IMG/VR virus record: IMGVR_UViG_3300005537_000001
Location: 62,001-126,000 of that record
Strand: one strand, 5' to 3'
DNA length: 64,000 nt
Shown here: piece after piece, positions 33,967 to 54,466 of the stretch
How the letters are laid out: each line of letters begins with the position of its first letter
Position numbering within the stretch: position 1 is the first letter of the stretch
Program-made: the position numbers and the translations under genes
Notes under the pieces: generated by a model
What the model saw: the letters and a program-made list of their open reading frames with translations, nothing else
Databases searched by the model: none
Told to the model about the DNA's origin: nothing

Positions 33967-34977
33967 GTGAAGACATACGGCCTAATCGTCGGTAAGTTCT
34001 CCCCGCTTCACCGCGGTCATGAGCACCTCATCAGTGAAGCTGAAAAACAGTGTGATAGCCTGTTGGTTCTGAGCTACTCGAATCCGGAATTTCGCAAGTG
34101 CGAGGCAAAGATTAGAAAAGAATGGTTGCAGGCACGGTTTCCTTCGGTTCGCTGCGTCGTTCTTGACCCGATTAATTTTCCATCGATGCCAGACAACCAA
34201 GCGAGCGACGCTGAACAGCAGGAATTTTTCAGCTGGATAGTCAACGACGTTTTGGAATATCCGGTGACCCACCTGTTCGCTAACGAGCGATGGGCTGAAA
34301 AGTGCGCACTAAACCTTTCGATTGGCGCGGGGCACCATGTAACAGCGGTAGCATTGGATCCACTGCGGGTGAAGAATCCGATCAGCGCGACATCCATCCG
34401 AGAAGCTCCACACCTCAACGCAAATTGGATGTCACCATTCGTTCGCGCGTCATACGTTACGCAGAAGATAGTTCTTCTTGGTGGTGAATCAACGGGTAAA
34501 ACGACTCTCGCGAAAGCCCTTGCTGAAAAATTCGATACCAGCTGGGTACCTGAATATGGCCGTGAGCTGTGGGAAGAAAAGAATGGTGAGCTTGTTTTTA
34601 GCGACATGTTGAGAATCGGTCATGAGCAGAAATTTCGTGAAAAGTATTTCAACATCGGCGCTAATCGCTATCTCTTCTGCGATACCTCTCCTCTTACCAC
34701 GATGGGGTACAGCATGTGGCTGTACGGTAAAGTTGATGACAAGCTCGTGAAGCTGGCTGAAGAACTATACGACGGCGTCATTTTTTGCCAGGCAGATTTT
34801 GCGCACGTGAACGACGGGACGAGAGTTGGGCATGATTTTCGAAGCATGCAGCAAGATTGGTACAAGCACGTCATTCCGAAGATGAAGTGCCCAATCATCT
34901 CGGTGACCGGTACCATTGAGGAACGCGTTCTTACCGTGACCAACTGGCTGAAGACATCCAACCACAATTGGAACTAG
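33967..34977 (+). CDS. nadR: NadR-like NMN adenylyltransferase/ribosylnicotinamide kinase
   Basis: GKFSPLHRGH; GGESTGKT; EYGR; DT. Confidence 0.92.
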   Translation: MKTYGLIVGKFSPLHRGHEHLISEAEKQCDSLLVLSYSNPEFRKCEAKIRKEWLQARFPSVRCVVLDPINFPSMPDNQASDAEQQEFFSWIVNDVLEYPVTHLFANERWAEKCALNLSIGAGHHVTAVALDPLRVKNPISATSIREAPHLNANWMSPFVRASYVTQKIVLLGGESTGKTTLAKALAEKFDTSWVPEYGRELWEEKNGELVFSDMLRIGHEQKFREKYFNIGANRYLFCDTSPLTTMGYSMWLYGKVDDKLVKLAEELYDGVIFCQADFAHVNDGTRVGHDFRSMQQDWYKHVIPKMKCPIISVTGTIEERVLTVTNWLKTSNHNWN

Positions 34978-34985
34978 GAGATAAA

Positions 34986-37194
34986 ATGAAGGCGATGATG
35001 CTCGCTTTACTGTTGATCGGTGCCGCTCAGGCGGATGAGCTTGATGAGGTAGTTGTAACAGCTTCGCGGCAAGGTATCCAGTCGCTCCAGAAGATACCAG
35101 CTTCCATCACGGTAGTTGACCTAAAGGCTGAAGGACGCCTTGGAGCTACCGATCTCAGCGATGTCGCTAATTCGATTCCATCTCTCACCATCGAGCAAGG
35201 TGGACCAGGGTTAAACAAGATTGACATCCGTGGAATTACCGTTGAAAATGCCGACGTTCTCAACAACATCGACAGCAGACCTCTTGTCGCGGTCTACGTT
35301 GACGATACCCCGCTCGCCCTCGACGGCTTCAATCCGGATCTTAAGGTATTTGACCTTGACCGCATCGAGGTGCTGCGCGGTCCTCAGGGCACCCTCTACG
35401 GTGCCAGCTCCATGGCCGGCACGATTCGCTACATCACGAAAAAACCGAATCCCCAGGAATATTCTGGATCCGATGAAATTACGGTTTCAGATACGGTTGG
35501 CGGCGGCGTCAACTACGGCATCAAGGCGAGCGTCAACCTCCCGCTCAGCGCTCAAACGGCGCTGCTACTAAGCGGATACAACGCGCGCAATTCTGGATGG
35601 ATCAACAACATTCAGAATGGTCAGAACGGTGAAAATTGGGATCGGTCAACTCAAGGTCGAGCCGCGCTGCGTTGGACGCCGTCTGACTATTTCACCCTCG
35701 ACGCGAGCGTTCTCTTCGAGGAGCTTAACACCGGTGGAAGCAACTTTTCCTTCTCGGGCTTGGGCAAGAACGAATACGCAAGCTTAACTCCAACTCCAAT
35801 CACCGACAACATGAAGGTGTACAACCTAACCGAAACGATTACCCCGGATTTCGGTACTATCATCTCCTCAACCTCGTACACCACGCGAACTACCGGTTTC
35901 AACGACCAGGGGCAGTACCTTTCGGAGCTGTTCTTCGGAGTAACCGAGCCTACCACCTACGTCAACCAGAACACCCTGTCGCAGTTCTCCCAGGAATTTC
36001 GAGTCGTTTCTCGCCAAGATCAGCGCACGCGCTGGATTGTTGGCACCTTCTTCAATCACCTCAGCCGCGTCAACTACCAAGATGACAGCGGCGTCGGTTT
36101 TGGGCAGTACATTGGCTTCGATCCTCGAACGATCGGTGGATTTACGGCGGACAGCGTTTTCTCTGGAACTCAGGGCGTTAGGGAACGCGATTTTGGCATC
36201 TTTGGTGAGGTTACGTGGGCGCTAACGGATCGCCTCGACTTTACGGCCGGAGCCCGCTACTTCAACTGGCGACAGCGCTTCAACCTGCAGTTTGGTGGAC
36301 CAGGTGGATACGGAGCGTACGATACCGGCAGCAACGTTGTCAACAAGCAGCTCATCGAGGACGTTGGAGCTAAGGCGCAGGGAGTCAACCCGCGCTTCAT
36401 CGTTAGCTACAAGCTTTCCGATGACGCTATCGTCTTCGCCGAGGCGGCTGAAGGATTTCGCTACGGTGGTGCGAACGAGGCGGTACCAAACGCCAACGTT
36501 CCTGGCGCGTGCGGTGGGCAGCTGCAAAGTCAATTTCACCTGACTTCAGCTCCACCGTCCTACGGCCCAGATCACCTGTGGAGCTACTCGCTTGGTGAGA
36601 AGTCGCTCTTCCTTGACGACAAGCTTCGCGTCAACGCGACCATCTTCCTCATCGATTGGAAGAACGTGCAGGAGGCTGCCTACCTCGGTTCTTGCTCGTA
36701 TACGTACACAACCAACGCTGGAACGGTTATTAGCAAGGGCGGAGAGCTGGAAGCGACCTACAAGCTGGCACGCTATCTTACGCTCGGAATTAACGGATCC
36801 TTTACCCATGCCGCGGCAGATGGTGCTCTTCCCAACGTTGGAGCTCAAAGCGGAGATCTTACTCCGTACAGCCCAGAATGGCTTGGAGCCGCAACTGTTG
36901 ATTACAAGCTTGGTTTCAGCCGGTTGAACGTTGAATATTCGTACCACGGTCGAAGCGGAACGCGCTTCGACCCAGCTGATCCCAGCTACGTAGTTCTACC
37001 AGCCTACAAGAATCTCAATCTGGCTGAAACGTTCGAAGTTCGGTAGGACGCAGGTTAGCTTGTTCTCGCGGAACGCGTTGAACAGCTCACAGGTAACGAT
37101 GATCTACCCGGATCTTCTCGGCACTCAGCCTGGAAATCAGGTAGCGTACGCCAGACCCAGAACCATTGGGGTTCGATTCTCACAGCAATTCTAG
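34986..37194 (+). pseudogene. TonB-dependent receptor with +1 frameshift near 37041
   Basis: signal peptide, EVVVTA, plug RIEVLRGPQGTLYG; 50-aa tail ...PRTIGVRFSQQF in next frame 37042-37194. Confidence 0.88.
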
Positions 37195-41701: not shown

Positions 41702-42315
41702 TGAATGAATCGCGTGGGCATCATTTAATTAAACAGCCAAAGAAAAGAATAGGATCTAGTGGTGGTGGGTCATGGTGGACATCAACTCCTCGGCGGCTTG
41801 CTTGTAAATTTCGAGCACGTGAGCTAATTGAAATTGAATTAGGAGGAGAAGAGCTCATGCTCAGTGGTAGGGGCATTTATAGCACCGTACCGAAAATATT
41901 TGAGCAAGTAAAATCTGAATTCCCAGATGTTTTTGAAGAATATTTGAGAGATAAAGGTAAGGATATTACGCAAAAAATTTTGGGTGATAGAGTTCACAAA
42001 ATGTACTATTCCTACTTGCCTAAAGAAGGAAAGAAATATCATGGTAGATCAACTGAACATCCAATTTTTAATGGTGAAAAGAATACTGAGCCAAGTGATA
42101 GATGGACCATAAAGCCGAAACAAATCGGTATGGACATCAAGCTGGTTATAATTGTTGATGATCAAGCTTACGAAGGTAATCACGACAAGCTTGTTGACAT
42201 AATTCGTGCTGACATACTTGCTAAGGGTAAAAATTGGTCTAGATATGAAAGAACTAGATATGATGGTAAGGGATTACGTGGTGGCGCTGAAGTTTGGTCT
42301 AAAATAGAAAAATAA
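41698..42315 (+). CDS. AT-rich hypothetical protein
   Basis: ORF track; visibly lower GC. Confidence 0.6.
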   Translation: MMNESRGHHLIKQPKKRIGSSGGGSWWTSTPRRLACKFRARELIEIELGGEELMLSGRGIYSTVPKIFEQVKSEFPDVFEEYLRDKGKDITQKILGDRVHKMYYSYLPKEGKKYHGRSTEHPIFNGEKNTEPSDRWTIKPKQIGMDIKLVIIVDDQAYEGNHDKLVDIIRADILAKGKNWSRYERTRYDGKGLRGGAEVWSKIEK

Positions 42316-42352
42316 CTGTTTACTTTTAGCGTCAACTGTAGTAATATGTCAT

Positions 42353-42834
42353 CTCGGTAGCAATACTGATGTCTACACAGGGGCAAAACGACCTGAAGGC
42401 AAAACCTTCAGGTCGTTCTCAAAAACGGTGGAGATCCATAAATAGATTCACGTTTAAATGTCTTCTGGAGTAGTTTGTGTCTTCGATATCAGTTCTTCCG
42501 CAGTCCTATCTAGCGATTCTCGCTACAGGTAGCGTATTGCCAGCAGGAACAGAGACTATCTGACCCTTAATCAACGAAAGCGAAGATTAAGGGGAGCTCA
42601 AAGCTCCCCAAATTGTTTCTGAAGACGAAGATTTGAAAATTAGCGGTTCAAGGCTCCGCTAGGAAGAGGACAGATGAGTCCCACCAAACAAAAGTCGGAC
42701 CGCGAAGAAGCCGATCGGTGCCCTTGCCTGAGATCGGAATGAGTGCGAGACAAGGTACCTATGGTATCCGGGTTAGGCAACTAGCCCGGGTACTATTTTG
42801 AAGCTCATTTACACGAGTGAGCTTCAAAATAGTA
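42353..42834 (+). ncRNA. candidate large structured ncRNA
   Basis: promoter 42319-42347, no ORF, many perfect hairpins and GNRA loops. Confidence 0.55.
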
Positions 42835-42835
42835 T

Positions 42836-42910
<75 letters not shown>

Positions 42911-42915
42911 TTTTT

Positions 42916-43001
42916 GGGTGTGTATGCAAGAGGCCAAAGCGCGCAGTCTGTAAAACTGACTCCTTCGGGATTCGTAGGTTCGACTCCTACCGCACCCACC
43001 A
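42916..43001 (+). tRNA. tRNA-Tyr(GTA)
   Basis: cloverleaf, long V arm. Confidence 0.92.
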
Positions 43002-43005
43002 TTTT

Positions 43006-43139
43006 AGCAAACCGTTGATTAGGATTATCTGGCGCAGTGAGTTTCGATACCACGCCTACAGGTGCTAACATCTGTAGAGCCTCAGTTTAGGGAGAGGCAT
43101 CTGACCGCCTACGGGCACCCCTATCGCTCTTTGTTTGCT
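43006..43139 (+). ncRNA. element copy 1, permuted, around T-arm-like/acceptor/D-arm pieces
   Basis: AGCAAAC-CG..GATTATC ... TTT-GTTTGCT. Confidence 0.7.
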
Positions 43140-43217
43140 CTTTTAAAGGGACACGGCTGCAGTTGTGAACGTGGAGAAATCCATTCGGTGGCATGCTGCA
43201 GCAACCTCCCTACTTTT

Positions 43218-43324
43218 TGCAACCGCTTAAAGAAGGTTATCTAAGTTCAACTCTTAGGCTGCTCACGCAGTCACGGCATATCCTCACGGATACGGCGCCA
43301 ACTCCGTCTTTTACCTTTGTTGCA
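43218..43324 (+). ncRNA. element copy 2, permuted
   Basis: TGCAAC-CG..GGTTATC, CTAAG-TTCAACT-CTTAG T-arm, TTT-GTTGCA. Confidence 0.7.
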
Positions 43325-43524
43325 TTTCTTTCGAAGTGTCTCGTTAAAAACGGGTCTTACAGGTCCACGAAGATCGAGTCAACCGTCACTTTGAATCCTT
43401 CCTCTTGATCGACTAAGCCAAAAGTCACCGGCTCACGATGCTGGAAACGTCGCATAACCGACTGTAGAGGACCATTTTACAGCTACCAGAACGATCTCTG
43501 CTTAAGCAAATCGCTGGGGCTCCT

Positions 43525-43598
43525 GCGGGTTTGGTATAGAGGTTGTGCCAAAGCCTTCCAAGCTTTAGAGGCGGGTCCGAGTCCCGCAACCCGCTCCA
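43525..43598 (+). tRNA. tRNA-Gly(TCC)
   Basis: cloverleaf. Confidence 0.9.
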
Positions 43599-43783
43599 AT
43601 TTAATCCTTCCCGAGATGATGTGAAGGGCTGGTCTTCGCCAGTGAAGCTGGACAACCCAGCGATCATCAAATACTACTCTGCTGCATCCGGTAACAAGGG
43701 CCTAGGTAAGCTCTTGGGGTGCAGTGGGACCAGTGAAAGTCTGGCGCATGGATCGCTTGCGAAACGGGTCCCTTGAATTTTAT

Positions 43784-43871
43784 GCGCTTGTAGGCGAATT
43801 GGCATAGCCACTGGTTTGAGGTACCAGAACTCGAAAGGGTCCTGTGGGTTCGAGTCCCACCATGCGCACCA
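43784..43871 (+). tRNA. tRNA-Leu(GAG)
   Basis: cloverleaf. Confidence 0.9.
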
Positions 43872-44202
43872 AATACAGGAATTAAATTCCTCCGGAAGTC
43901 CGGCGTGCGGGTTCCACGATAACGCGCCCAACATCTAAGTCCTATTTGAGAACGCGGGTTGAAATCCTCCCCTCATCTAGGCGCATTTTTGTTCGCTGGT
44001 AAGCAAACGGTACATAGCCGTGGGTCTAACTGTCGGAATTAGCCGGCTCATTGACGAGCAAGTGACAGTCGAACAAATTAAACCCGACCGAAGCTGATTT
44101 AGTTCGGCTTAGCGTAGAAGAACCGCCGCAGGATATTGCGGCGAGACGGGCATCGCCACTCAGGGCGTCTGGGCACAGCCCATAAGTACTGAGACGATTT
44201 AT

Positions 44203-44280
44203 AGCGGATGAGTGAAACGGTTTACATTCAAGGCTCATAACCTTCGAGACACTAGGTTCGACTCCTAAGATCCGCTACCA
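44203..44280 (+). tRNA. tRNA-Met(CAT)
   Basis: cloverleaf; Met versus Ile2 not certain. Confidence 0.8.
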
Positions 44281-44308
44281 CCAGGTTAGGGTGATGCATA
44301 AATAACTA

Positions 44309-44944
44309 ATGCATCACCTTTTATACAAAACCACAAATATTCTCAACAATCGCTTCTACGTTGGGATGCACTCTACTAAGAACCCTAAAGACAGGTATCT
44401 TGGGAGTGGCAAGCGAATAAAGTACGAGATCCAAAAGTATGGTAAAGAAAACTTCAAGAGAGAAATCTTGGAGGAGTTCCCAACTCGTAAGGCGCTCGAA
44501 GATGCTGAAGCAGAAGTCGTGAATGAGGAACTTCTTTCCGATCCTCTCTGTCTCAATTTGAAAAATGGTGGAGAAGGTGGTGGTAGAATATGGAATTCTA
44601 ACCATGCAAAGAAATTTCATCGGGCTGGTTGGGAAGCGATGCATAGAAACAAAGATCATGTAGCAGCCGGATTAAAATCGGGTAAAACTAGAGAAAAAAG
44701 AAATCAAGAAGGATTGTACCCTCCTGGAACTTTTACGAGTCATTTTGGTGGAATGCAGCATTCTGAAAAATCTCGTGCGCAGATGAAAAATACTCATGCT
44801 AGAAACGCTCATCAGCGGGCTGAAAAAAATTCAAATTTTGGCAAGCGAAATGCTTGTGTTAACAAGGACGGAAAGAATAAAAGAATTCCACTAGATCAAC
44901 TTGAAATGTTTATAACTGATGGATGGACTAAAGGTCTAGTTTAG
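44309..44944 (+). mobile_element. free-standing GIY-YIG (Seg-like) homing endonuclease
   Basis: LLYKTTN..N.FYVG.H....D.YLGSG. Confidence 0.85.
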
Positions 44945-45015
44945 AAATACGTTTTTCGAGGTGGCGGAGTTTCCACCATTTGTAGGCCATGGATGGCCCA
45001 AAAGTTTACGCGAAT

Positions 45016-45105
45016 GCCTGGGTGGCGAAATTTGGTATCCGCGGCGGGCTTAGAACCCGTTGATCTTGATCGGTCGTGCAGGTTCGAGTCCTGTCCCAGG
45101 CACCA
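45016..45105 (+). tRNA. tRNA-Leu(TAG)
   Basis: cloverleaf. Confidence 0.9.
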
Positions 45106-45179
45106 ATTAGCGTCGGCAAAACCGACGAAAGCGCGGGCAGCCATTGTGATTTAGAGATCACGTATGGTCCGCGCAGTTT

Positions 45180-45259
<80 letters not shown>

Positions 45260-45465
45260 AAATTCGCTCAACAAGAGCGCGTCAGTTTGATCGGAAAAAT
45301 CCAGTGTTCACCTGGATAATGCACTGCAAGGCCAAATGTCCTAGGAAACTTTTGGTACTCAGTTATTGGTAGAAGAAATAGAGAGTAAGCTTCTCAGAAA
45401 TAAGCTACCAAGCTAAAAGCAAACGGCAGCGGGGCTAGCGTTGTCCATAACGATCAATTTAATTC

Positions 45466-45540
45466 GGGGGTATGTTGAAGCTGGGATCATAAGACGTTCG
45501 CAACGTCTAGTCGCGAGTTCGACTCTCGCTACCTCCACCA
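45466..45540 (+). tRNA. tRNA-Ala(CGC)
   Basis: G3:U70. Confidence 0.85.
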
Positions 45541-45556
45541 AATCTAGGAGAATAAT

Positions 45557-45739
45557 ATGAACCCATTAGATCAAGAGGAACACATCAAGCGCATCGTTTG
45601 CGAAAGTCAAACGTATACTGAAGTGATTAAGAAGCTGGGTTTCTCCAAGAATGCAAATTATGAGTGGATCGTCAATTTTATCAAGGAAAACAACCTTAAG
45701 TTGAAACCACTCTCGTTCGAGAACGCTAATTTAAGTTAG
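45557..45739 (+). CDS. small hypothetical protein
   Basis: AGGAG RBS. Confidence 0.6.
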   Translation: MNPLDQEEHIKRIVCESQTYTEVIKKLGFSKNANYEWIVNFIKENNLKLKPLSFENANLS

Positions 45740-45787
45740 CTGCAGTAGAAGTCTGCCGTTTGGGCGTCGAAAAGTCCACAAGATTAC

Positions 45788-45913
45788 GAGGTAATAGCTC
45801 AATAGTAGAGCATCAGGGAAGTAGAAGAAATAGGAACTACGCTGAAGTACAAAGCGACTATCTAAAGTATTGAAAACCGGAAGACAATGGTGCGATCCCA
45901 TTTTACTTCACCA
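45788..45913 (+). tRNA. tRNA-Phe(GAA)-like gene with 52-nt insert
   Basis: acceptor, D and T arms intact; TTGAAAA loop after insert. Confidence 0.65.
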
Positions 45914-46021
45914 TCAAATAAAGCTGCTACGAGCGAGTGAAAAATAGCAGCGCCGCCGGAAACGGTCCCACCTGGAGTGGTTAAGAGAATCTCGCATGCG
46001 GCAGAAATGCCGTCTCTTTAT

Positions 46022-46166
46022 GAAGTTGTAGGGAAGTGGTTAAACCCAGCGAAGCCGAAAGGCATATCCATTCTCGCCTTTTGTTGCGCAAGCAACCGAT
46101 AGAAAATGGTTATCATTAAGTCGCTGCCGAAAGGCTACGCCGGTTCGAATCCGATTGCCAACTTCA
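46022..46166 (+). tRNA. Tyr-like tRNA body interrupted by element copy 3 (46066-46114)
   Basis: GAAGTTG/CAACTTC acceptor; anticodon unresolved. Confidence 0.55.
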
Positions 46167-46219
46167 CTCCCAATCTTTTTGCTGGTTCTTATAAATATTC
46201 TCGTAAGGAGAATTTTAAA

Positions 46220-46930
46220 ATGAAGCCTGCAAAATATGTAAGACAAGAAAATCGAAAATATCACTACATTTACAAAATTACTCGATTTGATAATCATTAC
46301 TATTATGGCCGTCATTCAACGGATAATTTAGATGATGGATATTTTGGTAGTGGCAAACGTCTTTGGCATTCCATAAATTATCATGGCATAGAAAAACACA
46401 CTAAGGCGATTTTGGAATATCTTCCAACACTAACCTCTCTAAAAATAAGAGAAAGCCAGATAGTAAATGAAACATGTCTAAATGATCCCCTCTGCTTGAA
46501 CCTCCAATTAGGAGGTGGTGGTGGATTCATTAGTGAAGAACATCAGCGAAAGGCCTCATTAGCAGGTAGAGATAAAGCTCTCACTGCAATGAGGGAAATT
46601 TTTAAAAGTGGTAGCGAAGAAGCGGCGCGAAGAGCAAAAAATTCTGCTGCTACTCAAAAGCGTATGAGGCAAAATGGTGAGTTAACATATACCAAAAGAG
46701 AGCGAAATAACATCACCACTGTAGCCGCAACATTAGCCGCCGCCACTCCTAAATCTAGGGAAAAGAAAAAGAAAACATTTGCTGAGCGAAAACATCAGCA
46801 GGGTGAAAAGAATTCAAATTTTGGAAAGAGAAATGCTGTCATCAACAAAGATGACAAGAATAAGAGAATCCCTCTGTCAAAATTAGATGAGTATCTAAAT
46901 GCCGGATGGACCAGAGGTCTAATACGATAG
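46220..46930 (+). mobile_element. second GIY-YIG (Seg-like) homing endonuclease
   Basis: YIYKIT...YYG.HST....D.Y.GSG; C-terminus shared with 44309. Confidence 0.85.
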
Positions 46931-47012
46931 GGAGGTTGTCTATGTCATCGCTAAACGCAACAAGGGTAATCTACGCCACAGCGTAGGTGGAACCACCGCA
47001 AAATTTAGAAGG

Positions 47013-47273
47013 ATGTGCGAGGTATATCGATACTTCTCGCGTCACTGGGAACACGTTTTAGATTTTAGCGACGAGTCGCTAGTCGAACTGTTCAACCATG
47101 AGTCCTACGGAACTCCATGTTCACCAAAGAACGGATTTCTAGTAGGCAAGCAGCACCTTAACGTCAACGTTGCCATGTGGAAGGAAGACATCATCAAGGG
47201 AGTTCTGTTTAAACAGGAACTTTACGATGGTGAATTTCCAACTTGGTGGCTTGACAGTATTTTCAGGGTATAG
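47013..47273 (+). CDS. hypothetical protein
   Basis: ORF track. Confidence 0.6.
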   Translation: MCEVYRYFSRHWEHVLDFSDESLVELFNHESYGTPCSPKNGFLVGKQHLNVNVAMWKEDIIKGVLFKQELYDGEFPTWWLDSIFRV

Positions 47274-47338
47274 CTCAGCGGGAGAGCGCTCGTTTTGGAA
47301 ACGAGAGGTCGCACGTTCAATCCGTGTTACCCTGACCA
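47264..47338 (+). tRNA. tRNA-Pro(TGG)
   Basis: cloverleaf. Confidence 0.88.
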
Positions 47339-47401
47339 CTTTATACGTCCACCATGCTGTGGAATGTGCACCTAAGACCGTCACGCGGTCTTTGCCTATA
47401 T

Positions 47402-47477
47402 GCCACTTTAGCTCAGCTGGTAGAGCAAAGGTTTTGTAAACCTGAGGTCGTGGGTTCGATCCCTACAAGTGGCACCA
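47402..47477 (+). tRNA. tRNA-Thr(TGT)
   Basis: cloverleaf. Confidence 0.9.
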
Positions 47478-47625
47478 AATTCAGCTCTCGCAAGAGAGTT
47501 CGAGCGCGGCTCGAAGGCGCTCCGATGCTGTCCAGCGCGACAGTGGCTTTCTTCGAAAGGCGGATTCGAACCGCCGGGTTAGTAGCCAGTGATTGTTAAT
47601 CTCAAAACCCCGAAAAATTTTTCAT

Positions 47626-47748
47626 GAGGAAGTAGCTCAGTGGCAGAGCAGCCGCCAAACATCGTTTACGATATTTTGTCGAGCAATCGACCGTTGTATA
47701 ATGGTTATCCAAAGCAGCTTGTCGTAGGTTCGAATCCTATCTTCCTCT
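47626..47748 (+). tRNA. tRNA-Trp(CCA)-like gene interrupted by element copy 4 (47661-47709)
   Basis: GAGGAAG/CTTCCTC acceptor; TCCAAA directly after element. Confidence 0.65.
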
Positions 47749-47782
47749 CTTATTCTTTGAATATACGATTGATAAATATCGT

Positions 47783-48325
47783 ATGGCAAATCAATTTACA
47801 AAAGCAAAGGCATTAGGATTACCCAATCCTATACCATCCGAAGCTACATTAAAGAAATGGTCAGTTTCAGCTACAATAACCAATAATCGTAGATTTTCAG
47901 ATCCCAAAAATAGGGATCGTCAAAGTGCAGCTATGAAGCTTGCTGTTGAGAAATATCCAGAATCTTATGGTCCTTCGAATAGAGGTAGAACCAAGCGGAT
48001 AGATAAACATGGTCAAGCCTTTCAGGGAAAGTGGGAGCTGTATTTCTTTGAATGGTGCTTAGAAAATAACGTGGAAATTAAACGAGTTACTGAATCATTT
48101 CCATATGAATGGAATGGTAGTAGAAAATATTTTCCGGATTTTTATTTACCACAACTCAGCATGTATGCTGAAGTTAAGGGATATGAAACTCCTAGAGATT
48201 TAGCAAAATGGCGTGATTTTCCACATCGTCTAAAAATTATTAGGCGGGCGGATATCGAAAAGATATTAAAGAGGAATTTTGATTTAGGGTCTCTAGCTCA
48301 ATTGGTTAGAGCAGGAAACTCATAA
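47783..48325 (+). CDS. PD-(D/E)XK endonuclease
   Basis: Y.PDFY......EVKG. Confidence 0.8.
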   Translation: MANQFTKAKALGLPNPIPSEATLKKWSVSATITNNRRFSDPKNRDRQSAAMKLAVEKYPESYGPSNRGRTKRIDKHGQAFQGKWELYFFEWCLENNVEIKRVTESFPYEWNGSRKYFPDFYLPQLSMYAEVKGYETPRDLAKWRDFPHRLKIIRRADIEKILKRNFDLGSLAQLVRAGNS

Positions 48326-48363
48326 TTTCTTGGTTGCGGGTTCAAGTCCTGCGGGACCCACCA
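48287..48363 (+). tRNA. tRNA(CAT), Ile2-like
   Basis: body resembles bacterial ileX-type tRNAs. Confidence 0.85.
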
Positions 48364-48370
48364 CATATTT

Positions 48371-48445
48371 GCGACTGTAGCTCAGGGGTAGAGCAAACGA
48401 CTGATAATCGTTAGGTCGTAGGTTCAAATCCTACCTGTCGCACCA
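48371..48445 (+). tRNA. tRNA-Ile(GAT)
   Basis: cloverleaf. Confidence 0.92.
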
Positions 48446-48461
48446 TCAAAACGAGGAACAA

Positions 48462-48767
48462 ATGAATCGCGAACTCATCTATGTATTTCCGGATTATTGC
48501 TCCACCGGGTTGTGGAGAGCATCGACGGGTGTAAATCTTGAACCATCGAGTCTTGGTATATCTTCGGGCTTGCAGATAGCCCTAAAGTACTGGCACGCTC
48601 ACTGGGAACTCAACTTGACCGACATGGATAACTTGACATCGGATAGTCAAACTGATCTAACTTATGGTCAGAAAAGAGCCTTTGCGAGATGGACTGTTGA
48701 TGGCTACGAGCTTGCCCGTCGAATGACAAATGAGAGTGAGCGATACGAATTTCAATTCAAAGAATAA
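48462..48767 (+). CDS. hypothetical protein
   Basis: GAGGA RBS. Confidence 0.65.
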   Translation: MNRELIYVFPDYCSTGLWRASTGVNLEPSSLGISSGLQIALKYWHAHWELNLTDMDNLTSDSQTDLTYGQKRAFARWTVDGYELARRMTNESERYEFQFKE

Positions 48768-48918
48768 AGTTTTACTGCAAGAGCTGGAGGACGGGGGTAT
48801 CACCGAAATTGACCTCTCCTCGTTGGGCAGCGGCTAGTCGGTATGCCGGTTGTGTTGGAGCGTGATTTCACGCTGTCTTGGAGGAAACTAACAAGGCGTT
48901 GCGAGCACAAATTTTTAC

Positions 48919-49001
48919 GCGAGTGTGGATAATGAGAATTGGCAGATCTAACAGGCTCAAACCCTGTACCTTTGTGGGTTCGACTCCCACCACTCGTACC
49001 A
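48919..49001 (+). tRNA. tRNA-Leu(CAA)
   Basis: large D loop, short V region. Confidence 0.82.
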
Positions 49002-49006
49002 GTTTA

Positions 49007-49102
49007 TGGGAGATTAGTCAGCGCGCATCCGACTCGAGACAACGTATGCGTGAGGGTGATAGCGGCTTAAAATATTGGTTCGACCCCAATATCTCCCAGC
49101 CA
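49007..49102 (+). ncRNA. atypical tRNA-like RNA with 8-bp acceptor stem
   Basis: TGGGAGAT/ATCTCCCA-GCCA; T-arm ATTGG/CCAAT. Confidence 0.55.
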
Positions 49103-49110
49103 AAATCTAT

Positions 49111-49193
49111 GCGAGTGTGGATAATGAGAATTGGCAGATCTAACAGACTTAAAATCTGTTCCCTTGTGGGTTCGACTCCCACCACTCGTACCA
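49111..49193 (+). tRNA. tRNA-Leu(TAA)
   Basis: near-duplicate of Leu(CAA). Confidence 0.82.
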
Positions 49194-49271
49194 AGCTTTG
49201 AGTAAGGAAAGTAAACGGAGGATGGGCAGGCCGCGAACGTTAGCGGGCGGATACCCCACCGGCTCAAAACA

Positions 49272-49401
49272 ATTTCCAAACCGTTGATCGTTGATTATCG
49301 GTAAAATCGTCCCCTCATTAAAGGGTACAGATGAGTTTCAGGTTCAAGCCCTGCACCCTTCCGCGAGGAAGGTCTATCGACTTTCGCTTTTGTTTGGAAA
49401 T
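49272..49401 (+). ncRNA. element copy 5, permuted, around degenerate tRNA pieces
   Basis: 10-bp ATTTCCAAAC/GTTTGGAAAT; T-arm; CCTTCC-GCGA-GGAAGG. Confidence 0.72.
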
Positions 49402-49408
49402 TTATCAC

Positions 49409-49487
49409 GCGCTTGTGGTCAAACTGGCAAAGGCGCTCCGTTCAGACCGGAGAGATTCTGTGGGTTCGAGTCCCACCTTGCGCACCA
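49409..49487 (+). tRNA. tRNA-Leu(CAG)
   Basis: cloverleaf. Confidence 0.85.
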
Positions 49488-49492
49488 AATTT

Positions 49493-49569
49493 CAGGGTAT
49501 TGGAAAGTCTGGTAATCCGCTTCCCTCGGACGGAAGAGATCGCCCGTTCAAATCGGGCTACCCTGACCA
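49493..49569 (+). tRNA. tRNA-Pro(CGG)
   Basis: cloverleaf. Confidence 0.88.
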
Positions 49570-49608
49570 ACTGTTTACTTTTTACGATGTTCATGGTACA
49601 ATGAGCAA

Positions 49609-50622
49609 ATGAAACAAGCGCTAATCTTCTTGCTGCTGTTTATGACGCTGCCCGCGGTGGCATCTCATCGCCACCGCTCGCGATCACCGATAGCTATGAC
49701 GACGTCAAGCGTTGGCGCGAAGATCGATGCCTTCTCAGCTAGGATGGCCGCTCAGCATCAGTTTGACCGGCAGGAGATTCATGATTTCCTTACCCGCACC
49801 GAACCAAACATGGACGTGTTCAAGTTCTTCAACCGCAAGGCGAAGAAGAACTTCACCCCAGAAGAGCTTGAGGAGCTGAAGCTTCTCGCTCAACTTCGAA
49901 TTCAGCATGGAGTGGAATTTTGGAACAAGAACCAGAAAGCCCTCGACAAGGCGCAACTCGTTTACGGTGTTCCAGCTGAAGTCATCGTCGGTTTGATCGG
50001 CATCGAGACAAGCTACGGCTCCTACCTTGGCAAGTTCAAGGAACACCAGGTACTGGTCACCCTCGCGTTCTACGGTGATCATCGTTCTAGCTACTTTCAA
50101 ACCGAGCTAGAAAGCTTCTTGGTGTTATCACGCGAGTTTGGCTGGGATCGAGAAAACATCCCATGCTCCTACGCTGGAGCCGTTGGCATTCCGCAGTTCA
50201 TGCCCGACAACATGAAGCCATACGCGGTAGACTTTGATGACGATGGACGAGTTGATCTCATGGACCCTGCCGACGCGATCGGCAGCGTCGCGAGCTTTCT
50301 TTCTCAGCATGGCTGGGTAAAGGGTGAAGCGATAGCAACTCGAACAGGCGCTAGGATAGCCCGCAAAACCTTCGTGCTCAGAACTCTGCCTGGTCCAGCT
50401 CCTACGATCTGGAAGAAGCAGGAAAATTTCACGGTGATTCGACGGTACAATCCGCTCGACTCATACGCGATGGCGATCTTCATCCTAGCAAACAAGGTGA
50501 AGGACGTTAAAGATCATCAGCTTGAACCTATCGAGATCGATTCGGTTCAGATTGAAGCTCCTCCGGAATCTGATGAGGAACCCATGATAAATAGTAACGA
50601 GATTTCAAATCTCATGTTTTAA
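49609..50622 (+). CDS. mltB: lytic murein transglycosylase B-like
   Basis: IGIETSYG, SYAGA.G.PQFMP, AVDFD.DG.VDL, S.A..L..HGW. Confidence 0.9.
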   Translation: MKQALIFLLLFMTLPAVASHRHRSRSPIAMTTSSVGAKIDAFSARMAAQHQFDRQEIHDFLTRTEPNMDVFKFFNRKAKKNFTPEELEELKLLAQLRIQHGVEFWNKNQKALDKAQLVYGVPAEVIVGLIGIETSYGSYLGKFKEHQVLVTLAFYGDHRSSYFQTELESFLVLSREFGWDRENIPCSYAGAVGIPQFMPDNMKPYAVDFDDDGRVDLMDPADAIGSVASFLSQHGWVKGEAIATRTGARIARKTFVLRTLPGPAPTIWKKQENFTVIRRYNPLDSYAMAIFILANKVKDVKDHQLEPIEIDSVQIEAPPESDEEPMINSNEISNLMF

Positions 50623-50735
50623 CCGTTGGTATTCAGTTATCTTAAACTTGTGTGTATAACCCGAGGACGTTCGATTCGTTCGTGGCCATTTGGAAAAGGG
50701 GGCCAATCTCTGAATCCGCTTTTGTTGAATCATGA
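50612..50735 (+). ncRNA. element copy 6, permuted
   Basis: TTTAAC-CG..GTTATC; GGACG-TTCGATT-CGTTC T-arm; TTTT-GTTGAA. Confidence 0.7.
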
Positions 50736-50865
50736 GCTTTGAAATTTCATAATTTGGAGAATCGCGATGATTGGTTTAGTTGCTCGGTGGGGACACAACG
50801 TCCTCTTGGTTTCGCTGGTGCTGTTGACGATCGTGTACGTCATATCTACGCGATAGGAGCCCAAA

Positions 50866-51132
50866 ATGAATTTTGAAGAAGAGCTTAACAAGCTGGTGGC
50901 AGAATCTGGAAGCGCTACAACTCCAGAAGAACATCTCGCTATTCTTCGCAAGCTGCAGAAGCTTTTTGAGGACAACCGTAAACACGCGTACGATCATGGT
51001 GTTGAAACGTCAGCTTCTTACTATGACAACCCGGCGTACTGCATCATGGAAAATGCTGAGAACGGTGGGATCAACGTTTACACGGCAACCAACTACTACG
51101 AGTGGTTGCCATCGAGCTGGGATCGATGTTGA
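50866..51132 (+). CDS. distant W.PSS..C-tail protein
   Basis: helical N-terminus; ends EWLPSSWDRC. Confidence 0.65.
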   Translation: MNFEEELNKLVAESGSATTPEEHLAILRKLQKLFEDNRKHAYDHGVETSASYYDNPAYCIMENAENGGINVYTATNYYEWLPSSWDRC

Positions 51133-51402
51133 ACTGGCGATAACCGAGCTAGCCAGCGGTACGGGACGAGCTCACCCATAAGCGAGCTCACTGAATTTGA
51201 TCACCCTACCCAAGGGGTTCGAGAGAGTGGTTGGAAGCATCTCGGCAAGCGCGGCAATGCAAACCGCCGTGATCAAACGCATGCATCAGTTGACGGCGAC
51301 TGCGATAGCCGAGACTAATCGGGAGAGACCGATTGACACGCCGGTACAGACGGCGACGCGGCGAACTTTGAACCGGCCAGGGAGAAGTTCTCCAAGTATA
51401 CT

Positions 51403-51492
51403 GGAAGTGTGGCAGAGTGGTTGATTGCACCAGTCTTGAAAACTGGAGGCTACGCAAGTGGCTCGTGAGTTCGAATCTCACCGCTTCCGCCA
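51403..51492 (+). tRNA. tRNA-Ser(TGA)
   Basis: cloverleaf. Confidence 0.92.
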
Positions 51493-51735
51493 ATTTGATT
51501 TAGCGAAAAATTCTGACAATGCACTGCTTGATGTCGAAACATCGTGATGATGTAATCAAGTATCAGGTTAAACGTTTGTCGGCGCGCTAGTAGATTTTTG
51601 AAGTAGATTGTAAGAGGTCCATAACGCAGAGCGTAGCTTAGCGGCTCGCGCTGCCGGATTCGCGATACGGATTGCATTGCCGGGTTATTTGTACCGCGCG
51701 GATGTATGAAGTACCTGTCTACTTCACTTGTTTAT

Positions 51736-51811
51736 GGGGGATTAGCTCAGCTGGGAGAGCGTACGGTTTGCATCCGTAAGGTCATCGGTTCGATCCCGAT
51801 ATTCTCCACCA
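51736..51811 (+). tRNA. tRNA-Ala(TGC)
   Basis: identical to Ala(GGC) outside anticodon arm. Confidence 0.92.
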
Positions 51812-51813
51812 AT

Positions 51814-51880
51814 TTTGAAAAACCGATAGACATGGTTATCTATCATTCACGCTACCCGTGTCGAACTTTTGTTTTTCAAA
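51814..51880 (+). ncRNA. element copy 7, permuted, near-empty
   Basis: TTTGAAAAAC/GTTTTTCAAA; about 17 nt enclosed. Confidence 0.7.
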
Positions 51881-52022
51881 TTCGATTTTGAGACCCGAGA
51901 AATCGGGGTTATGGACCGCGGTGGTTGGCACGCTTAGACGTTGAGCTGAATATACCTGGGTTAGAAGCTCACCGAACGGGATTCTAGGCCTCTGCAGTGC
52001 ACGAACTATCTCTCAAAATTTT

Positions 52023-52098
52023 CGGAGTGTCGCCTAGCGGCCATGGCACTGGTTTTGGGTACCAGCTCTCGCGAGTTCGAGTCTCGCCACTCCGACCA
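52023..52098 (+). tRNA. tRNA-Pro(TGG), second type
   Basis: cloverleaf. Confidence 0.82.
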
Positions 52099-52266
52099 TT
52101 TATGCACACCTACCATGTTGTAGGATGTGTTATGAGGTAGTCTGACTGCCTCAGTCTATTTTACTGGTTTTCGTAAAACCAGTTGGGGTGGGTTAGCAAT
52201 AGCCGCCGGTTACTGGACCTAAACCAGTTGGTGGGGCGGTCGACTAAGTCGGCCCCGCGTTTGAAT

Positions 52267-52400
52267 TGACAACCGTTGATGATTGGTTATCTTTCGCCAA
52301 AACTGAAAGGCTAGCACAATTGGAATAGTGCACCCAACTTAGACTTGGGAGATGAGGGTTCGAGTCCCCGCTAAAACATCGATCTTCGCTTTTGTTGTCA
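52267..52400 (+). ncRNA. element copy 8 around a circularly permuted tRNA
   Basis: TCTTTC-GCCA precedes GAAAGG; D arm; CCCAA-CTTAGAC-TTGGG; T loop. Confidence 0.75.
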
Positions 52401-52424
52401 TCATAATTTTCAAGGAGATTGCTC

Positions 52425-52748: not shown

Positions 52749-52778
52749 TTTAATTTCTCTAGCATGAGAGTGACGTGA

Positions 52779-52849
52779 GCGGGATTGGTGTAGTGGTAGC
52801 CCGAAACCTTGCCAAGGTCTAAGTACCGGTTCGATTCCGGTATCCCGCT
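52779..52849 (+). tRNA. tRNA-Gly(GCC), CCA not encoded
   Basis: cloverleaf. Confidence 0.85.
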
Positions 52850-52886
52850 CAGGTCACTTTTGTGCTTTGATGTTTAGAGCTAAATC

Positions 52887-53390: not shown

Positions 53391-53394
53391 ATTT

Positions 53395-54463: not shown

Positions 54464-54466
54464 CTT

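What the first reader, a model, noticed from the sequence alone, without database searches (positions are those of the whole stretch)
42353..42834. About 480-nt ORF-free structured RNA heading the tRNA array
It starts just after a promoter. It has a 13-bp perfect hairpin (42387-42417), a 17-bp hairpin (42791-42834), GCAA/GAAA tetraloop helices and likely long-range GTCTTC/GAAGAC pairing. Established: large ncRNAs such as GOLLD and ROOL lie near phage tRNA clusters; I cannot assign a family by eye.
Basis: partly seen in the sequence, partly recalled or inferred. Interest (0 to 1): 0.6.

Follow-up and report, generated by a model that had tools for sequence, protein, structure and literature searches.

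The report
Codon-sampling leader controlling phage tRNA array
The stretch in front of this jumbo phage's tRNA array is not one big non-coding RNA: it is a promoter, a tiny gene whose codons match almost every tRNA encoded downstream, a terminator switch, and a new conserved RNA module, which together look like a device that turns the array on when decoding capacity runs short.

Summary
The structure is real: MFE -180.5 kcal/mol, z = -9, with both long hairpins and a GCAA loop as described. The stretch is not ORF-free and it matches no Rfam family, GOLLD and ROOL included. Only about 42500-42835 is conserved in relatives. Comparison with related metagenomic jumbo phages, and with the cultured Ralstonia phage RsoM2USA, shows a composite leader.

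1. A promoter whose 12-nt word recurs at the genome's second tRNA array.
2. A 28-codon ORF (42477-42563). Its 27 codons cover 19 of the 21 anticodons of its own array with wobble (0 of 20,000 random gene windows did as well), against 7 of 18 for the other array.
3. An antiterminator/terminator pair next to the stop codon. This is the layout of classical leader-peptide attenuators.
4. A conserved hairpin plus K-turn-like module with strong covariation, unknown to Rfam.
5. A 20-bp hairpin that abuts the first tRNA.

The second array has its own leader ORF, which matches its own tRNAs. The two RsoM2USA leaders show the same reciprocal specificity.

Most likely mechanism, inferred and not shown: ribosome stalling for lack of any array tRNA favours read-through into the array. 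No expression data exist, and this window's terminator is the weakest in the family.

The parts
42316..42348 (+). Sigma-70-like promoter: -35 TTTACT 42319-42324, 17-nt spacer, -10 TAATAT 42342-42347. Predicted start near 42353.
   Evidence: Read from the sequence. The word CTGTTTACTTTT occurs 4 times in G000, all on the + strand, including the head of array 2. GTTTAC-N16-18-TAnnAT occurs 14 times on + and once on -. The paralogous copy is called by the promoter scan as TTTACT-17-TATTAT with TG.
42353..42476 (+). G000-specific 5' part: 34-codon ORF-A 42369-42473 containing the 13-bp perfect hairpin 42387-42417, and CATAAATA at 42437-42444 (one mismatch to the TATAAATA motif found upstream of most leader ORFs in relatives).
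   Evidence: No counterpart in G001 or G003. ORF-A codons do not match either array better than chance. TATAAATA occurs 13 times on + and once on - in G000 and lies upstream of the leader ORFs in relatives.
42477..42563 (+). Leader ORF ('codon sampler', type 1): GTG start, GGAG at 42467-42470, 27 sense codons, TGA stop at 42561-42563.
   Evidence: Counterpart ORFs of like composition stand at the same place in G001, G003, G012 and G009. Its codons cover 15 of 21 array anticodons exactly and 19 of 21 with wobble; the null is 0.33 and 0.50, and 0 of 20,000 windows reached the observed values.
42511..42525 (+). P1: 6-bp hairpin inside the leader ORF, a candidate transcription-pause hairpin.
   Evidence: Present in the MFE. 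A hairpin of different sequence stands at the same place in G001 and G003. In type 2 leaders it is the conserved CTGGCA-loop-TGCCAG hairpin, with compensatory variants. This reading rests on inspection of those outputs.
42564..42593 (+). Pa: 9-bp hairpin (42564-42572 with 42585-42593), a candidate antiterminator. Its 5' arm starts directly after the stop codon.
   Evidence: The helix is kept with different sequences in G001 and G003 (CCCTTAATC, ACCCGAGTT, GACCCGGGT).
42591..42620 (+). Pb: GC-rich 8-bp hairpin (42591-42598 with 42602-42609) plus the tail AAATTGTTTCT; terminator-like. It shares 42591-42593 with Pa.
   Evidence: Called terminator-like by the scan. The homologous hairpins in relatives have 10-14 bp stems, mostly GAAA loops and U-rich tails, and overlap Pa by 3-10 nt. 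In this window Pa shortened to 6 bp can coexist with Pb (-25.8 against -25.6 kcal/mol).
42640..42662 (+). Pc: 7-bp hairpin with the loop TTCAAGGCT; first helix of the conserved RNA module.
   Evidence: In the model-based alignment A7 the Pc helix has changes on both sides in 6 of 6 pairs. That alignment placed the three type 1 rows on their mini-hairpin instead. Their own Pc varies U-A, A-U, G-C at its sixth pair in A4.
42668..42681 (+). Type-1-specific mini-hairpin (GGAC-AGATGA-GTCC).
   Evidence: Alignment A4: A-U in G000 against G-C in G001 and G003 at one pair. Absent from type 2.
42697..42748 (+). K-turn-like core. GGACCGC 42697-42703; C-stem 42701-42703 with 42743-42745; 3-nt bulge 42704-42706; tandem G.A/A.G at 42707-42708 with 42741-42742; Pd 42711-42716 with 42732-42737 and a 15-nt loop; GAGTGCGA 42741-42748.
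   Evidence: GGACCGC and GAGTGCGA are invariant in the 16 pattern-selected members. Two members found later with model R2 change paired C-stem positions together. On A7, Pd has 5 of 6 pairs with changes on both sides and the C-stem has one compensatory change; 88.5% of cells pair against 68.9% in shuffles; covariation 0.574 against 0.209, and at most 0.084 when partners are slid.
42754..42789 (+). Two G000-specific hairpins: 42754-42768, and 42768-42789 (9 bp with a GCAA loop).
   Evidence: They are an insertion relative to G001 and G003.
42791..42834 (+). Pf: 20-bp hairpin ending one base before tRNA-Val; a candidate processing (RNase III-type) site.
   Evidence: A 10-26-bp hairpin ends 0-9 nt before the first tRNA in 11 of 19 leaders.
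42836..42910 (+). tRNA-Val(TAC), first of the 22 tRNAs of array 1 (to 55851).

Best explanation
The region is the cis-acting leader of a polycistronic tRNA-array transcript. It is built from separable modules.

(a) One or two promoters.

(b) A leader-peptide transcription attenuator. It holds a short ORF whose codons are a panel of the codons read by the tRNAs encoded downstream, a hairpin inside the ORF (P1, a possible pause site), an antiterminator hairpin Pa whose 5' arm sits at the ORF's end, and a terminator hairpin Pb that shares bases with Pa.

Inferred logic, as in the trp and his leaders: if all sampled codons are decoded quickly, the ribosome runs to the stop codon, keeps Pa from forming, Pb forms and transcription stops. 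If the ribosome stalls earlier for lack of any one charged tRNA, Pa forms, Pb cannot, and RNA polymerase reads into the array. The phage would then make its tRNAs when decoding capacity for exactly those codons is short.

(c) A conserved non-coding module: hairpin Pc, then a K-turn-like internal loop carrying hairpin Pd. It probably binds a protein or organises the 5' end of the precursor. Its role is not known.

(d) A long hairpin abutting the first tRNA, probably a processing site that separates leader from tRNA.

Shown here: the sequence elements, their conservation and covariation, and the codon/anticodon statistics. Inferred: translation of the ORF, termination at Pb, the direction of the switch, and the roles of (c) and (d).
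For: Family and position:
- The tRNA order Val(TAC)-Tyr-Gly(TCC)-Leu(GAG) is syntenic in relatives G001 and G003. Their array heads align with 42526-42835, with compensatory changes.
- A covariance model of the core finds a diverged paralog about 100 nt upstream of the first tRNA (His) of the second array, in both G000 and G001.
- A second model finds one or two copies in 7 of 7 near-complete related genomes.
- In all 19 leaders examined, a same-strand tRNA array follows the module; in 17 of them the first tRNA starts 50-226 nt after the core.

Leader ORF:
- The window ORF 42477-42563 has GGAG at -10 and counterparts of like composition in four related genomes.
- It covers 0.71 of its own array's anticodons exactly and 0.90 with wobble. 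The null is 0.33 +/- 0.09 and 0.50 +/- 0.11, and 0 of 20,000 windows reached either value. 0.85 of its codons are decoded by the array (P = 0.004).
- Cross-controls, exact coverage. G000 leader 1: 0.71 against array 1, 0.17 against array 2. G000 leader 2: 0.89 against array 2, 0.29 against array 1. G001 gives the same pattern.
- In 13 of 16 leaders, at least one of the two main measures (wobble coverage, share of codons decoded by the array) has P < 0.05.
- Within type 2, the cognate codon is present in 175 of 195 cases where the tRNA is in the array, against 98 of 155 where it is not.
- G045 has a mixed array and its leader has a mixed composition.
- The cultured phage RsoM2USA has two further leaders of unrelated sequence with reciprocal specificity. 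The share of leader codons decoded by the own run is 0.75-0.83 against 0.08 for the other run; wobble coverage for leader A is 1.00 against a null of 0.44.

Attenuator:
- Pb is a GC-rich stem plus a U-rich tail in nearly all members. The Pa 3' arm overlaps the Pb 5' arm by 3-10 nt. The stop codon lies 0-24 nt from the Pa 5' arm.
- Type 1 peptides keep composition but not sequence. The conserved 'WQxCQ' of type 2 coincides with the P1 RNA hairpin.

RNA module: strong covariation.

Pf: conserved in position.
Against: - There is no expression evidence of any kind. The only run holding the sequence is one soil DNA metagenome.
- In this window the attenuator is the weakest of the family. Pa and Pb overlap by only 3 nt, and a 6-bp Pa and a full Pb can coexist at equal energy. 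Three A's separate the Pb stem from a poor U-tract. The start codon is GTG.
- About half of the type 2 leaders lack a clear Shine-Dalgarno word.
- For type 2 the codon coverage exceeds the null only moderately. The genomes are related, so the many leaders are not independent tests. Roughly four or five independent leader types carry the argument: type 1, type 2, G045, and RsoM2USA A and B.
- In type 2 the stop codon lies 18-24 nt after the Pa 5' arm, so a terminating ribosome sits inside the Pa loop rather than on the arm. Blocking of Pa there is inferred.
- Arrays were delimited by a gap rule and by contig ends, which adds noise.
- The role of the K-turn-like module is unexplained, and no L7Ae-type protein is encoded.
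Confidence: 0.6

Rival explanations
1. One reading: the ~480 nt are one large structured non-coding RNA of the GOLLD/ROOL type that acts as an RNA, perhaps in trans, and merely lies next to the tRNAs.
For: Very stable fold (z = -9). A conserved, covarying RNA module lies inside it. GOLLD and ROOL are known to lie near phage tRNA genes (established knowledge).
Against: No Rfam family matches, even at E <= 10. Only about 335 nt are conserved. The 5' conserved part behaves as a coding ORF plus terminator. The modules occur separately: the ORF and attenuator stand alone in the G012 Val array and in RsoM2USA, and the RNA module stands alone in G039 and G044. Two diverged copies per genome, each at an array head, argue for a cis role.
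Confidence: 0.04
2. The small ORFs encode functional micro-proteins, Pb is simply their terminator, and the match to the array's anticodons has no regulatory meaning.
For: Type 2 peptides share a conserved motif. A gene followed by a terminator is the commonest arrangement in any genome.
Against: Type 1 peptides keep composition but not sequence. The conserved type 2 motif overlaps an RNA hairpin with compensatory changes. Reciprocal codon/anticodon specificity recurs in several unrelated leader types. The stop codon is always placed at Pa, and Pa always overlaps Pb. No homologs were found in PHROGs or in 5.8 billion proteins; the closest is a weak 0.08 hit.
Confidence: 0.12
3. The leader ORF senses translation, but through another route or with the opposite sign. 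For example, ribosome stalling exposes RNA to Rho or to RNases (polarity) and lowers array expression, or translation merely protects the leader.
For: The window's Pb has a poor U-tract, and Pa and Pb can coexist here. The array is long and untranslated, so it would be a target for Rho.
Against: Most members have canonical intrinsic terminators with 7-10 nt of obligatory overlap with Pa. That is the geometry of classical attenuators.
Confidence: 0.12
4. An RNA-only leader for processive antitermination or precursor processing, like the rrn leader or HK022 put. The ORF would be incidental, and the K-turn-like module the active part.
For: The module is the most conserved part. It is found in every near-complete genome of the clade and can stand without the ORF (G039, G044). 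Pf looks like an RNase III substrate.
Against: This does not explain the codon/anticodon match or the Pa/Pb/stop geometry. The module is absent from RsoM2USA, XacN1 and LucasX, and from the G012 Val array, which still has the ORF and attenuator. The module may well have such a role in addition to the attenuator.
Confidence: 0.1

Closest known systems
Leader-peptide transcription attenuators of amino-acid biosynthetic operons (trpL, hisL, pheL, leuL, thrL, ilvL)
   Same: A short ORF just after the promoter, a hairpin inside the ORF, mutually exclusive antiterminator and terminator hairpins, and a stop codon placed so that a ribosome reaching it prevents the antiterminator. Sensing would be by ribosome stalling at informative codons.
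   Different: The controlled genes are tRNA genes, not enzymes. The informative codons are not a run for one amino acid but a panel of about 15-20 different codons, roughly one per tRNA species encoded downstream. The element occurs in phages, with one distinct leader per array. I found no report of this in three full-text searches, which does not prove that none exists.
T-box riboswitches
   Same: They link the supply of a tRNA to read-through of a terminator, and they contain a K-turn at the base of Stem I.
   Different: A T-box binds one uncharged tRNA directly, needs no translation, and controls aminoacyl-tRNA synthetase and amino-acid genes. There is no Rfam T-box match here. In this element the K-turn-like module lies downstream of the terminator.
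GOLLD (RF01998) and ROOL (RF03087) large ncRNAs
   Same: Large structured RNA next to phage tRNA genes.
   Different: No covariance-model match. The element is much smaller, contains an ORF and is modular.
Kink-turn (K-turn) motifs such as Kt-7, U4 snRNA and box C/D
   Same: A 3-bp C-stem, a 3-nt bulge, tandem G.A/A.G pairs, and then a helix (Pd). The strand CGC-NAU-GA resembles the end of box C (GAUGA).
   Different: Identified by sequence pattern and covariation only. No L7Ae-family protein is encoded by the phages. There is a second GA/GA pair on the other side of the C-stem and a conserved 12-nt Pd loop (GAGUA-NN-CUUYA in type 2).
Phage T4 tRNA gene cluster with its stable species 1 and 2 RNAs, and rRNA-operon leaders
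   Same: Extra structured RNA is co-transcribed with tRNAs, and leader hairpins are processed by RNases. Both a TATAAATA motif and a sigma-70-like promoter are present.
   Different: No leader ORF or attenuator is known there. This comparison is from memory and was not tested here.

Membership tests
GOLLD / ROOL / any Rfam 15 family | Score at or above the family's gathering threshold with its covariance model | tested here: not met
   Nothing but tRNAs in 42200-43600, even at E <= 10. The best other hits are hairpin-level chance matches. The same holds for four relatives' leaders.
Leader-peptide transcription attenuator | Short ORF with a start codon and ribosome-binding site close behind a promoter | tested here: met
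   ORF 42477-42563, GTG start, GGAG at -10. Promoter at 42319-42347. The type 1 leaders of G000, G001 and G003 have GGAG or GAGGA 8-10 nt before the start. Only about half of the type 2 leaders have a clear SD word.
Leader-peptide transcription attenuator | ORF enriched in codons whose decoding reports on the product of the controlled genes | tested here: met
   19 of 21 array anticodons are covered by 27 codons; 0 of 20,000 null windows did as well. Reciprocal cross-controls hold in G000, G001 and RsoM2USA.
Leader-peptide transcription attenuator | Intrinsic terminator (GC-rich hairpin plus U-tract) between the ORF and the controlled genes | tested here: inconclusive
   Clear in the paralog and in relatives: 12-bp stems with tails such as CGTTTTTGG or TTTTGTTATC. 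In this window the hairpin is called terminator-like, but the tail AAATTGTTTCT is poor.
Leader-peptide transcription attenuator | Antiterminator helix mutually exclusive with the terminator, with its 5' arm within reach of a ribosome at the stop codon | tested here: inconclusive
   Met in the family: 7-10 nt overlap in 9 members, with the stop 0-24 nt from the Pa 5' arm (RsoM2USA). In the window the overlap is only 3 nt and both helices can coexist. The stop codon directly abuts the Pa 5' arm.
Leader-peptide transcription attenuator | Translation-dependent change in read-through | not testable with these tools
   No RNA data exist; the only run is one soil DNA metagenome.
K-turn | C-stem, 3-nt bulge, tandem sheared G.A/A.G, then an NC-stem | tested here: met
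   Sequence pattern CGC-NNN-GA...GA-GUG in 19 members. The C-stem has one compensatory change and G.U to G-C changes; the NC-stem (Pd) covaries at 5 of 6 pairs. One member has AA in place of GA.
K-turn | Kinked three-dimensional geometry or binding of an L7Ae-type protein | not testable with these tools
   No structure is available. No PF01248 (L7Ae) homolog was found in 5 genomes of the clade.
T-box riboswitch | Stem I with specifier loop and the T-box sequence in the antiterminator | tested here: not met
   No Rfam T-box match at E <= 10.

The most novel reading that the evidence does not exclude
Jumbo phages regulate their tRNA arrays with 'codon-sampler' leader peptides. Each array is preceded by a mini-ORF carrying about one codon for each tRNA species encoded behind it, and the ORF is wired to an antiterminator/terminator switch. 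The phage would thereby measure decoding capacity for exactly the tRNAs it can supply. It would switch the array on when any of them runs short, for example after host tRNA decay or cleavage by anticodon-nuclease defences. A second, previously undescribed K-turn-like RNA module then prepares the precursor.
Probability: 0.5. Interest if true: 0.9.

Novelty: new variant of a known kind. Interest (0 to 1): 0.8.

Why it matters
How phages control their often very large tRNA gene sets is essentially unknown. The arrays are usually treated as constitutive cargo.

A leader peptide that samples the array's own codons would be the first attenuator known to control tRNA genes, as far as my searches show. 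It would also be the first that integrates many amino acids at once. It would give a direct, testable link between translational stress and phage tRNA supply, including tRNA-targeting host defences.

The same signature in the cultured Ralstonia phage RsoM2USA makes this testable at the bench. The signature could also be used to find small regulatory ORFs that gene callers miss. None of these ORFs is in the protein databases or in the GenBank annotation.

The K-turn-like module is a new candidate RNA family. A covariance model found it in 19 viral records, two of which hold two copies. An exact pattern for its commoner form found none in 185,579 bacterial and archaeal species genomes.

Tried and rejected
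- Rfam, at gathering and permissive thresholds, on the window and on relatives: nothing.
- blastn of the element against 50,697 phage records and 20 related IMG/VR records: only tRNA matches or chance words.
- The flanking 205-aa ORF as a synteny anchor: an orphan, with no homolog anywhere. DUF7275 and NAMPT are too widespread or too diverged to anchor synteny. TerL worked.
- RNA-seq evidence: only one soil DNA run holds the sequence.
- My first reading of the conserved 5' part as an RNA 'aptamer domain', and of the region after Pb as an rrn-type boxA: dropped once the reading frame became evident.
- ORF-A (42369-42473) as a second sampler for array 2: coverage 0.50 and 0.72, which equals the null, so rejected.
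- Hammerhead-like CAGAUGAG in type 1: it lacks the conserved U and is absent from type 2. RNase P-like words: no model match.
- L7Ae partner: none found.
- The type 1 pattern in metagenome contigs: it found only the same three phages plus one chance hit in a high-GC bacterial coding region.
- About 32 of the 49 IMG/VR pattern hits have no tRNA downstream. That number fits the count I estimated for chance matches, so I set them aside.
- The K-turn module is not in RsoM2USA, LucasX or XacN1. I saw no clear sampler ORF at the XacN1 runs I fetched.
- Protein searches with the leader peptides: no homologs. One search used a wrong frame for the type 2 peptide, which one search corrected.
Full report
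**Setting.** The window is bases 62001-126000 of a 368,054-bp viral record with direct terminal repeats. The only sequencing run that holds it is a soil DNA metagenome. The genome is a jumbo phage with 43 tRNAs by ARAGORN, plus a permuted tmRNA. The tRNAs form two main arrays. Array 1 has 22 tRNAs from window 42836 to 55851. Array 2 has 20 tRNAs at G000 139898-145869, outside the window. The terminase has many relatives at 50-82% identity on large metagenomic contigs. Proteins from the window match cultured jumbo phages such as RsoM2USA and LucasX at only about 40-45% identity.

**Check of the observation.** The 482 nt fold to -180.5 kcal/mol against -130.1 +/- 5.6 for dinucleotide shuffles, z = -8.98. 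The 13-bp hairpin (42387-42417), the GCAA-capped helix (42768-42789) and the long hairpin before tRNA-Val (42791-42834, 20 bp) are all there. The promoter is below the scan's threshold. Its 12-nt word CTGTTTACTTTT recurs only four times in the genome, always on the + strand, and one copy sits at the head of array 2. There the scan does call TTTACT-17-TATTAT. The claim 'ORF-free' fails. The proposed GTCTTC/GAAGAC pairing rests on a G000-specific insertion.

**Finding relatives.**
- Sequence searches with the element itself found nothing, and the flanking genes are not conserved.
- The tRNA order is conserved. Val(TAC)-Tyr-Gly(TCC)-Leu(GAG) heads an array in G001 (358 kb) and G003.
- The DNA upstream of their tRNA-Val aligns with window 42526-42835, with many compensatory changes.
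- A covariance model of the core (R1) then found weaker copies about 100 nt upstream of the first tRNA (His) of the second array, in both G000 and G001. I call these type 2 and the window's element type 1.
- The pattern GGACCGC-NANGA-N22-40-GAGTGCGA hit 49 IMG/VR loci. Of these, 17 lie 50-230 nt upstream of a same-strand tRNA array. The rest are about the number I estimated for chance.
- A stricter type 2 pattern has no match in 185,579 bacterial and archaeal species genomes.
- A type 1 pattern finds only G000, G001 and G003 in the metagenome collection, plus one chance hit.
- A second model (R2, 13 sequences) finds the module in 7 of 7 near-complete genomes of the clade. In all 19 leaders examined a same-strand tRNA array follows it; in 17 of them the first tRNA starts 50-226 nt after the core.

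**The RNA module (window 42640-42748).** On the model-based alignment of 19 members, 88.5% of cells pair (shuffles 68.9 +/- 1.6). 14 of 18 pairs show changes on both sides. The covariation score is 0.574 against 0.209 in shuffles, and at most 0.084 when the partners are slid.
- Helix Pc and helix Pd covary at almost every pair. For Pc the count rests on the type 2 rows, because the model placed the three type 1 rows on their mini-hairpin.
- Between them, GGACCGC and GAGTGCGA are invariant in the 16 pattern-selected members. They form a 3-bp stem (CGC with GUG; one compensatory U-A, and G.U to G-C changes), a 3-nt bulge and tandem G.A/A.G pairs next to Pd. That is the K-turn signature.
- No L7Ae-family gene is present in five genomes.
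- Rfam has no such family.

**The turn: a leader ORF.** I printed 400 nt upstream of every module. What I had taken for a conserved 5' RNA domain is a small reading frame with start and stop codons, often preceded by a Shine-Dalgarno word, that ends in or next to hairpin Pa.
- In the window it is 42477-42563: GTG start, GGAG at -10, 27 sense codons.
- Counterpart ORFs stand at the same place in G001 and G003 and before the Val arrays of G012 and G009.
- Type 1 peptides share composition (Ser, Leu, Thr, Ala, Val, Gly, Ile, Pro, Tyr) but hardly any sequence. Type 2 peptides are rich in Thr, Arg, Gln, Asn, Glu, Phe, Lys, Asp, His, Trp and Cys.
- These are the amino acids of the tRNAs in the respective arrays.

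**Statistics of the codon/anticodon match.**
- The window ORF holds the exact Watson-Crick codon for 15 of the 21 distinct anticodons of array 1, and a wobble-readable codon for 19 of 21. 85% of its codons are readable by the array.
- In 20,000 windows of equal length taken from the genome's 262 long ORFs, the means were 0.33, 0.50 and 0.51. None reached the observed coverages.
- Exact coverage in the cross-controls. G000 leader 1: 0.71 against array 1, 0.17 against array 2. G000 leader 2: 0.89 against array 2, 0.29 against array 1. G001 behaves the same.
- In 13 of 16 leaders, at least one of the two main measures (wobble coverage, share of codons decoded) has P < 0.05.
- Within type 2, a codon is present in 90% of cases where its tRNA is in the array and in 63% where it is not (Fisher P = 3e-9). 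The genomes are related, so this is not a true probability. Examples are Val(GAC) at 7 of 7 against 2 of 7, and Cys(GCA) at 11 of 11 against 1 of 3.
- G045 has a mixed array and a mixed leader.
- The cultured Ralstonia phage RsoM2USA gives an independent test. A 24-codon ORF rich in His, Trp, Tyr, Ser, Leu, Pro, Val, Glu and Cys precedes a run of exactly those tRNAs: wobble coverage 1.00 against 0.44, codons decoded 0.75 against 0.27, both P <= 2e-4.
- A second ORF in the same phage, rich in Phe, Asn, Gln, Arg, Met, Ile, Lys, Ala, Asp and Val, precedes the matching run: codons decoded 0.83 against 0.45. Each decodes only 0.08 on the other's run.
- Neither ORF is annotated in GenBank.

**The switch.** Behind each ORF stands Pb, a GC-rich stem of 8-14 bp, mostly with a GAAA loop, and a U-rich tail. 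The 5' arm of Pb is at the same time the 3' arm of Pa, with 3-10 shared bases. The 5' arm of Pa lies at the end of the ORF.
- In the G000, G001 and G003 type 1 leaders the stop codon touches the Pa 5' arm.
- In type 2 the stop lies 18-24 nt further on, inside the Pa loop.
- RsoM2USA has the same layout, with the first tRNA only about 10 nt after the U-tract of head B.
- A hairpin inside the ORF (P1) is kept with different sequences. In type 2 it explains the conserved 'WQxCQ'.

This is the architecture of classical leader-peptide attenuators. From it I infer, but cannot show, that a ribosome reaching the stop prevents Pa, so that Pb terminates. A ribosome stalled earlier lets Pa form, and polymerase reads on.

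**Caveats for this window.** Pa and Pb share only three G's. A shortened Pa and a full Pb are isoenergetic (-25.8 against -25.6 kcal/mol). The U-tract is poor. This copy may regulate weakly, or differently, compared with its relatives. The first ~125 nt (42353-42476, with ORF-A and the 13-bp hairpin) are specific to this genome, and ORF-A shows no sampler signal. They also contain CATAAATA (42437-42444). That is one mismatch from TATAAATA, which lies upstream of most leader ORFs in relatives and is strongly strand-biased in G000 (13 against 1). It may therefore be a second, T4-late-like promoter.

**Downstream of the module.** A long hairpin ends 0-9 nt before the first tRNA in 11 of 19 leaders. 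Its position suggests a processing site, but nothing here tests that.

**Modularity.** The ORF and attenuator occur without the RNA module in the G012 Val array and at both RsoM2USA heads. The module occurs without the ORF in G039 and G044, directly after a coding gene. So the 480 nt are a composite.

**Literature.** Three full-text searches found no report of leader-peptide control of tRNA genes or arrays. That is an absence in one library, not proof.

**Verdict.** What is there is, most likely, a known mechanism (leader-peptide attenuation) in a new and surprising form, plus a new RNA motif. All functional statements are inferences from sequence.

Noticed in passing
window 28242-28646: A permuted (two-piece type) tmRNA gene in the phage; Rfam tmRNA_permuted, 75 bits. 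ARAGORN gives the tag peptide ANDAFFGEELRLAA.
   Followed up: no
window 34968-37046; also 30211-32889 and 33967-34977: A phage-encoded TonB-dependent-receptor-like ORF (Plug plus beta-barrel domains) lies next to an NAD salvage set: NMN adenylyltransferase/Nudix, NAMPT and an AAA_28/NadR-like ORF. An outer-membrane receptor gene in a phage is unusual.
   Followed up: no
window 62199-62272 and G000:C1:126682-126759: Two tRNAs with anticodon CTA (amber-suppressor type; ARAGORN calls them 'Pyl'). XacN1 also carries two. This may point to TAG read-through or recoding in part of the genome.
   Followed up: no
window 53953-54062: An Rfam Atu_At1 (Rhizobiales sRNA) match at essentially the gathering score (60.1 against 60), ending five bases before tRNA-Ser(CGA) at 54068. 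It may be a tRNA-linked structured spacer rather than that sRNA.
   Followed up: no
window 45788-45910 and 47626-47748: Two 123-nt matches to the tRNA model that ARAGORN does not call. They could be tRNA genes with an insertion of about 50 nt (intron-like), or decayed copies.
   Followed up: no
window 44309-44944 and 46106-46930; 48916-49001 and 49108-49193: A GIY-YIG homing-endonuclease-like ORF sits inside the array, and a second ORF shares its 3' end (129 nt, 74% identical). A 92%-identical duplicate of a tRNA-Leu-like segment is also present.
   Followed up: no
window 49571 (G000 111571); G000 174936: Two further copies of the promoter word CTGTTTACTTTT. The one in the window follows tRNA-Pro(CGG) and precedes the SLT transglycosylase gene (49609-50622) inside the array.
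   Followed up: partly
G000:C1:139353-139897 (outside the window; locus L183 1160-1700): The paralogous type 2 leader of array 2: promoter TTTACT-17-TATTAT, TATAAATA, a 43-codon leader ORF (L183 1301-1432), a 12-bp terminator, the K-turn module, then tRNA-His.
   Followed up: yes
MG752970.1 112047-112133 (-) and 87248-87361 (-) (loci L209, L210): The cultured Ralstonia phage RsoM2USA has two unannotated sampler leader ORFs with an antiterminator/terminator pair before tRNA runs. In the GenBank record one is overlapped by an opposite-strand 'hypothetical protein' call. No tRNA feature was listed in the two stretches I fetched, one of which spans several tRNA genes found by the model.
   Followed up: yes
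L105 12366-13480 (-) (G009, head of the Val array): About 1.1 kb without long ORFs lies between the type 1 leader ORF/attenuator and tRNA-Val. It contains two near-identical ~90-nt repeats with promoter-like TTGTATAAT words and a remnant resembling the type 1 core.
   Followed up: partly
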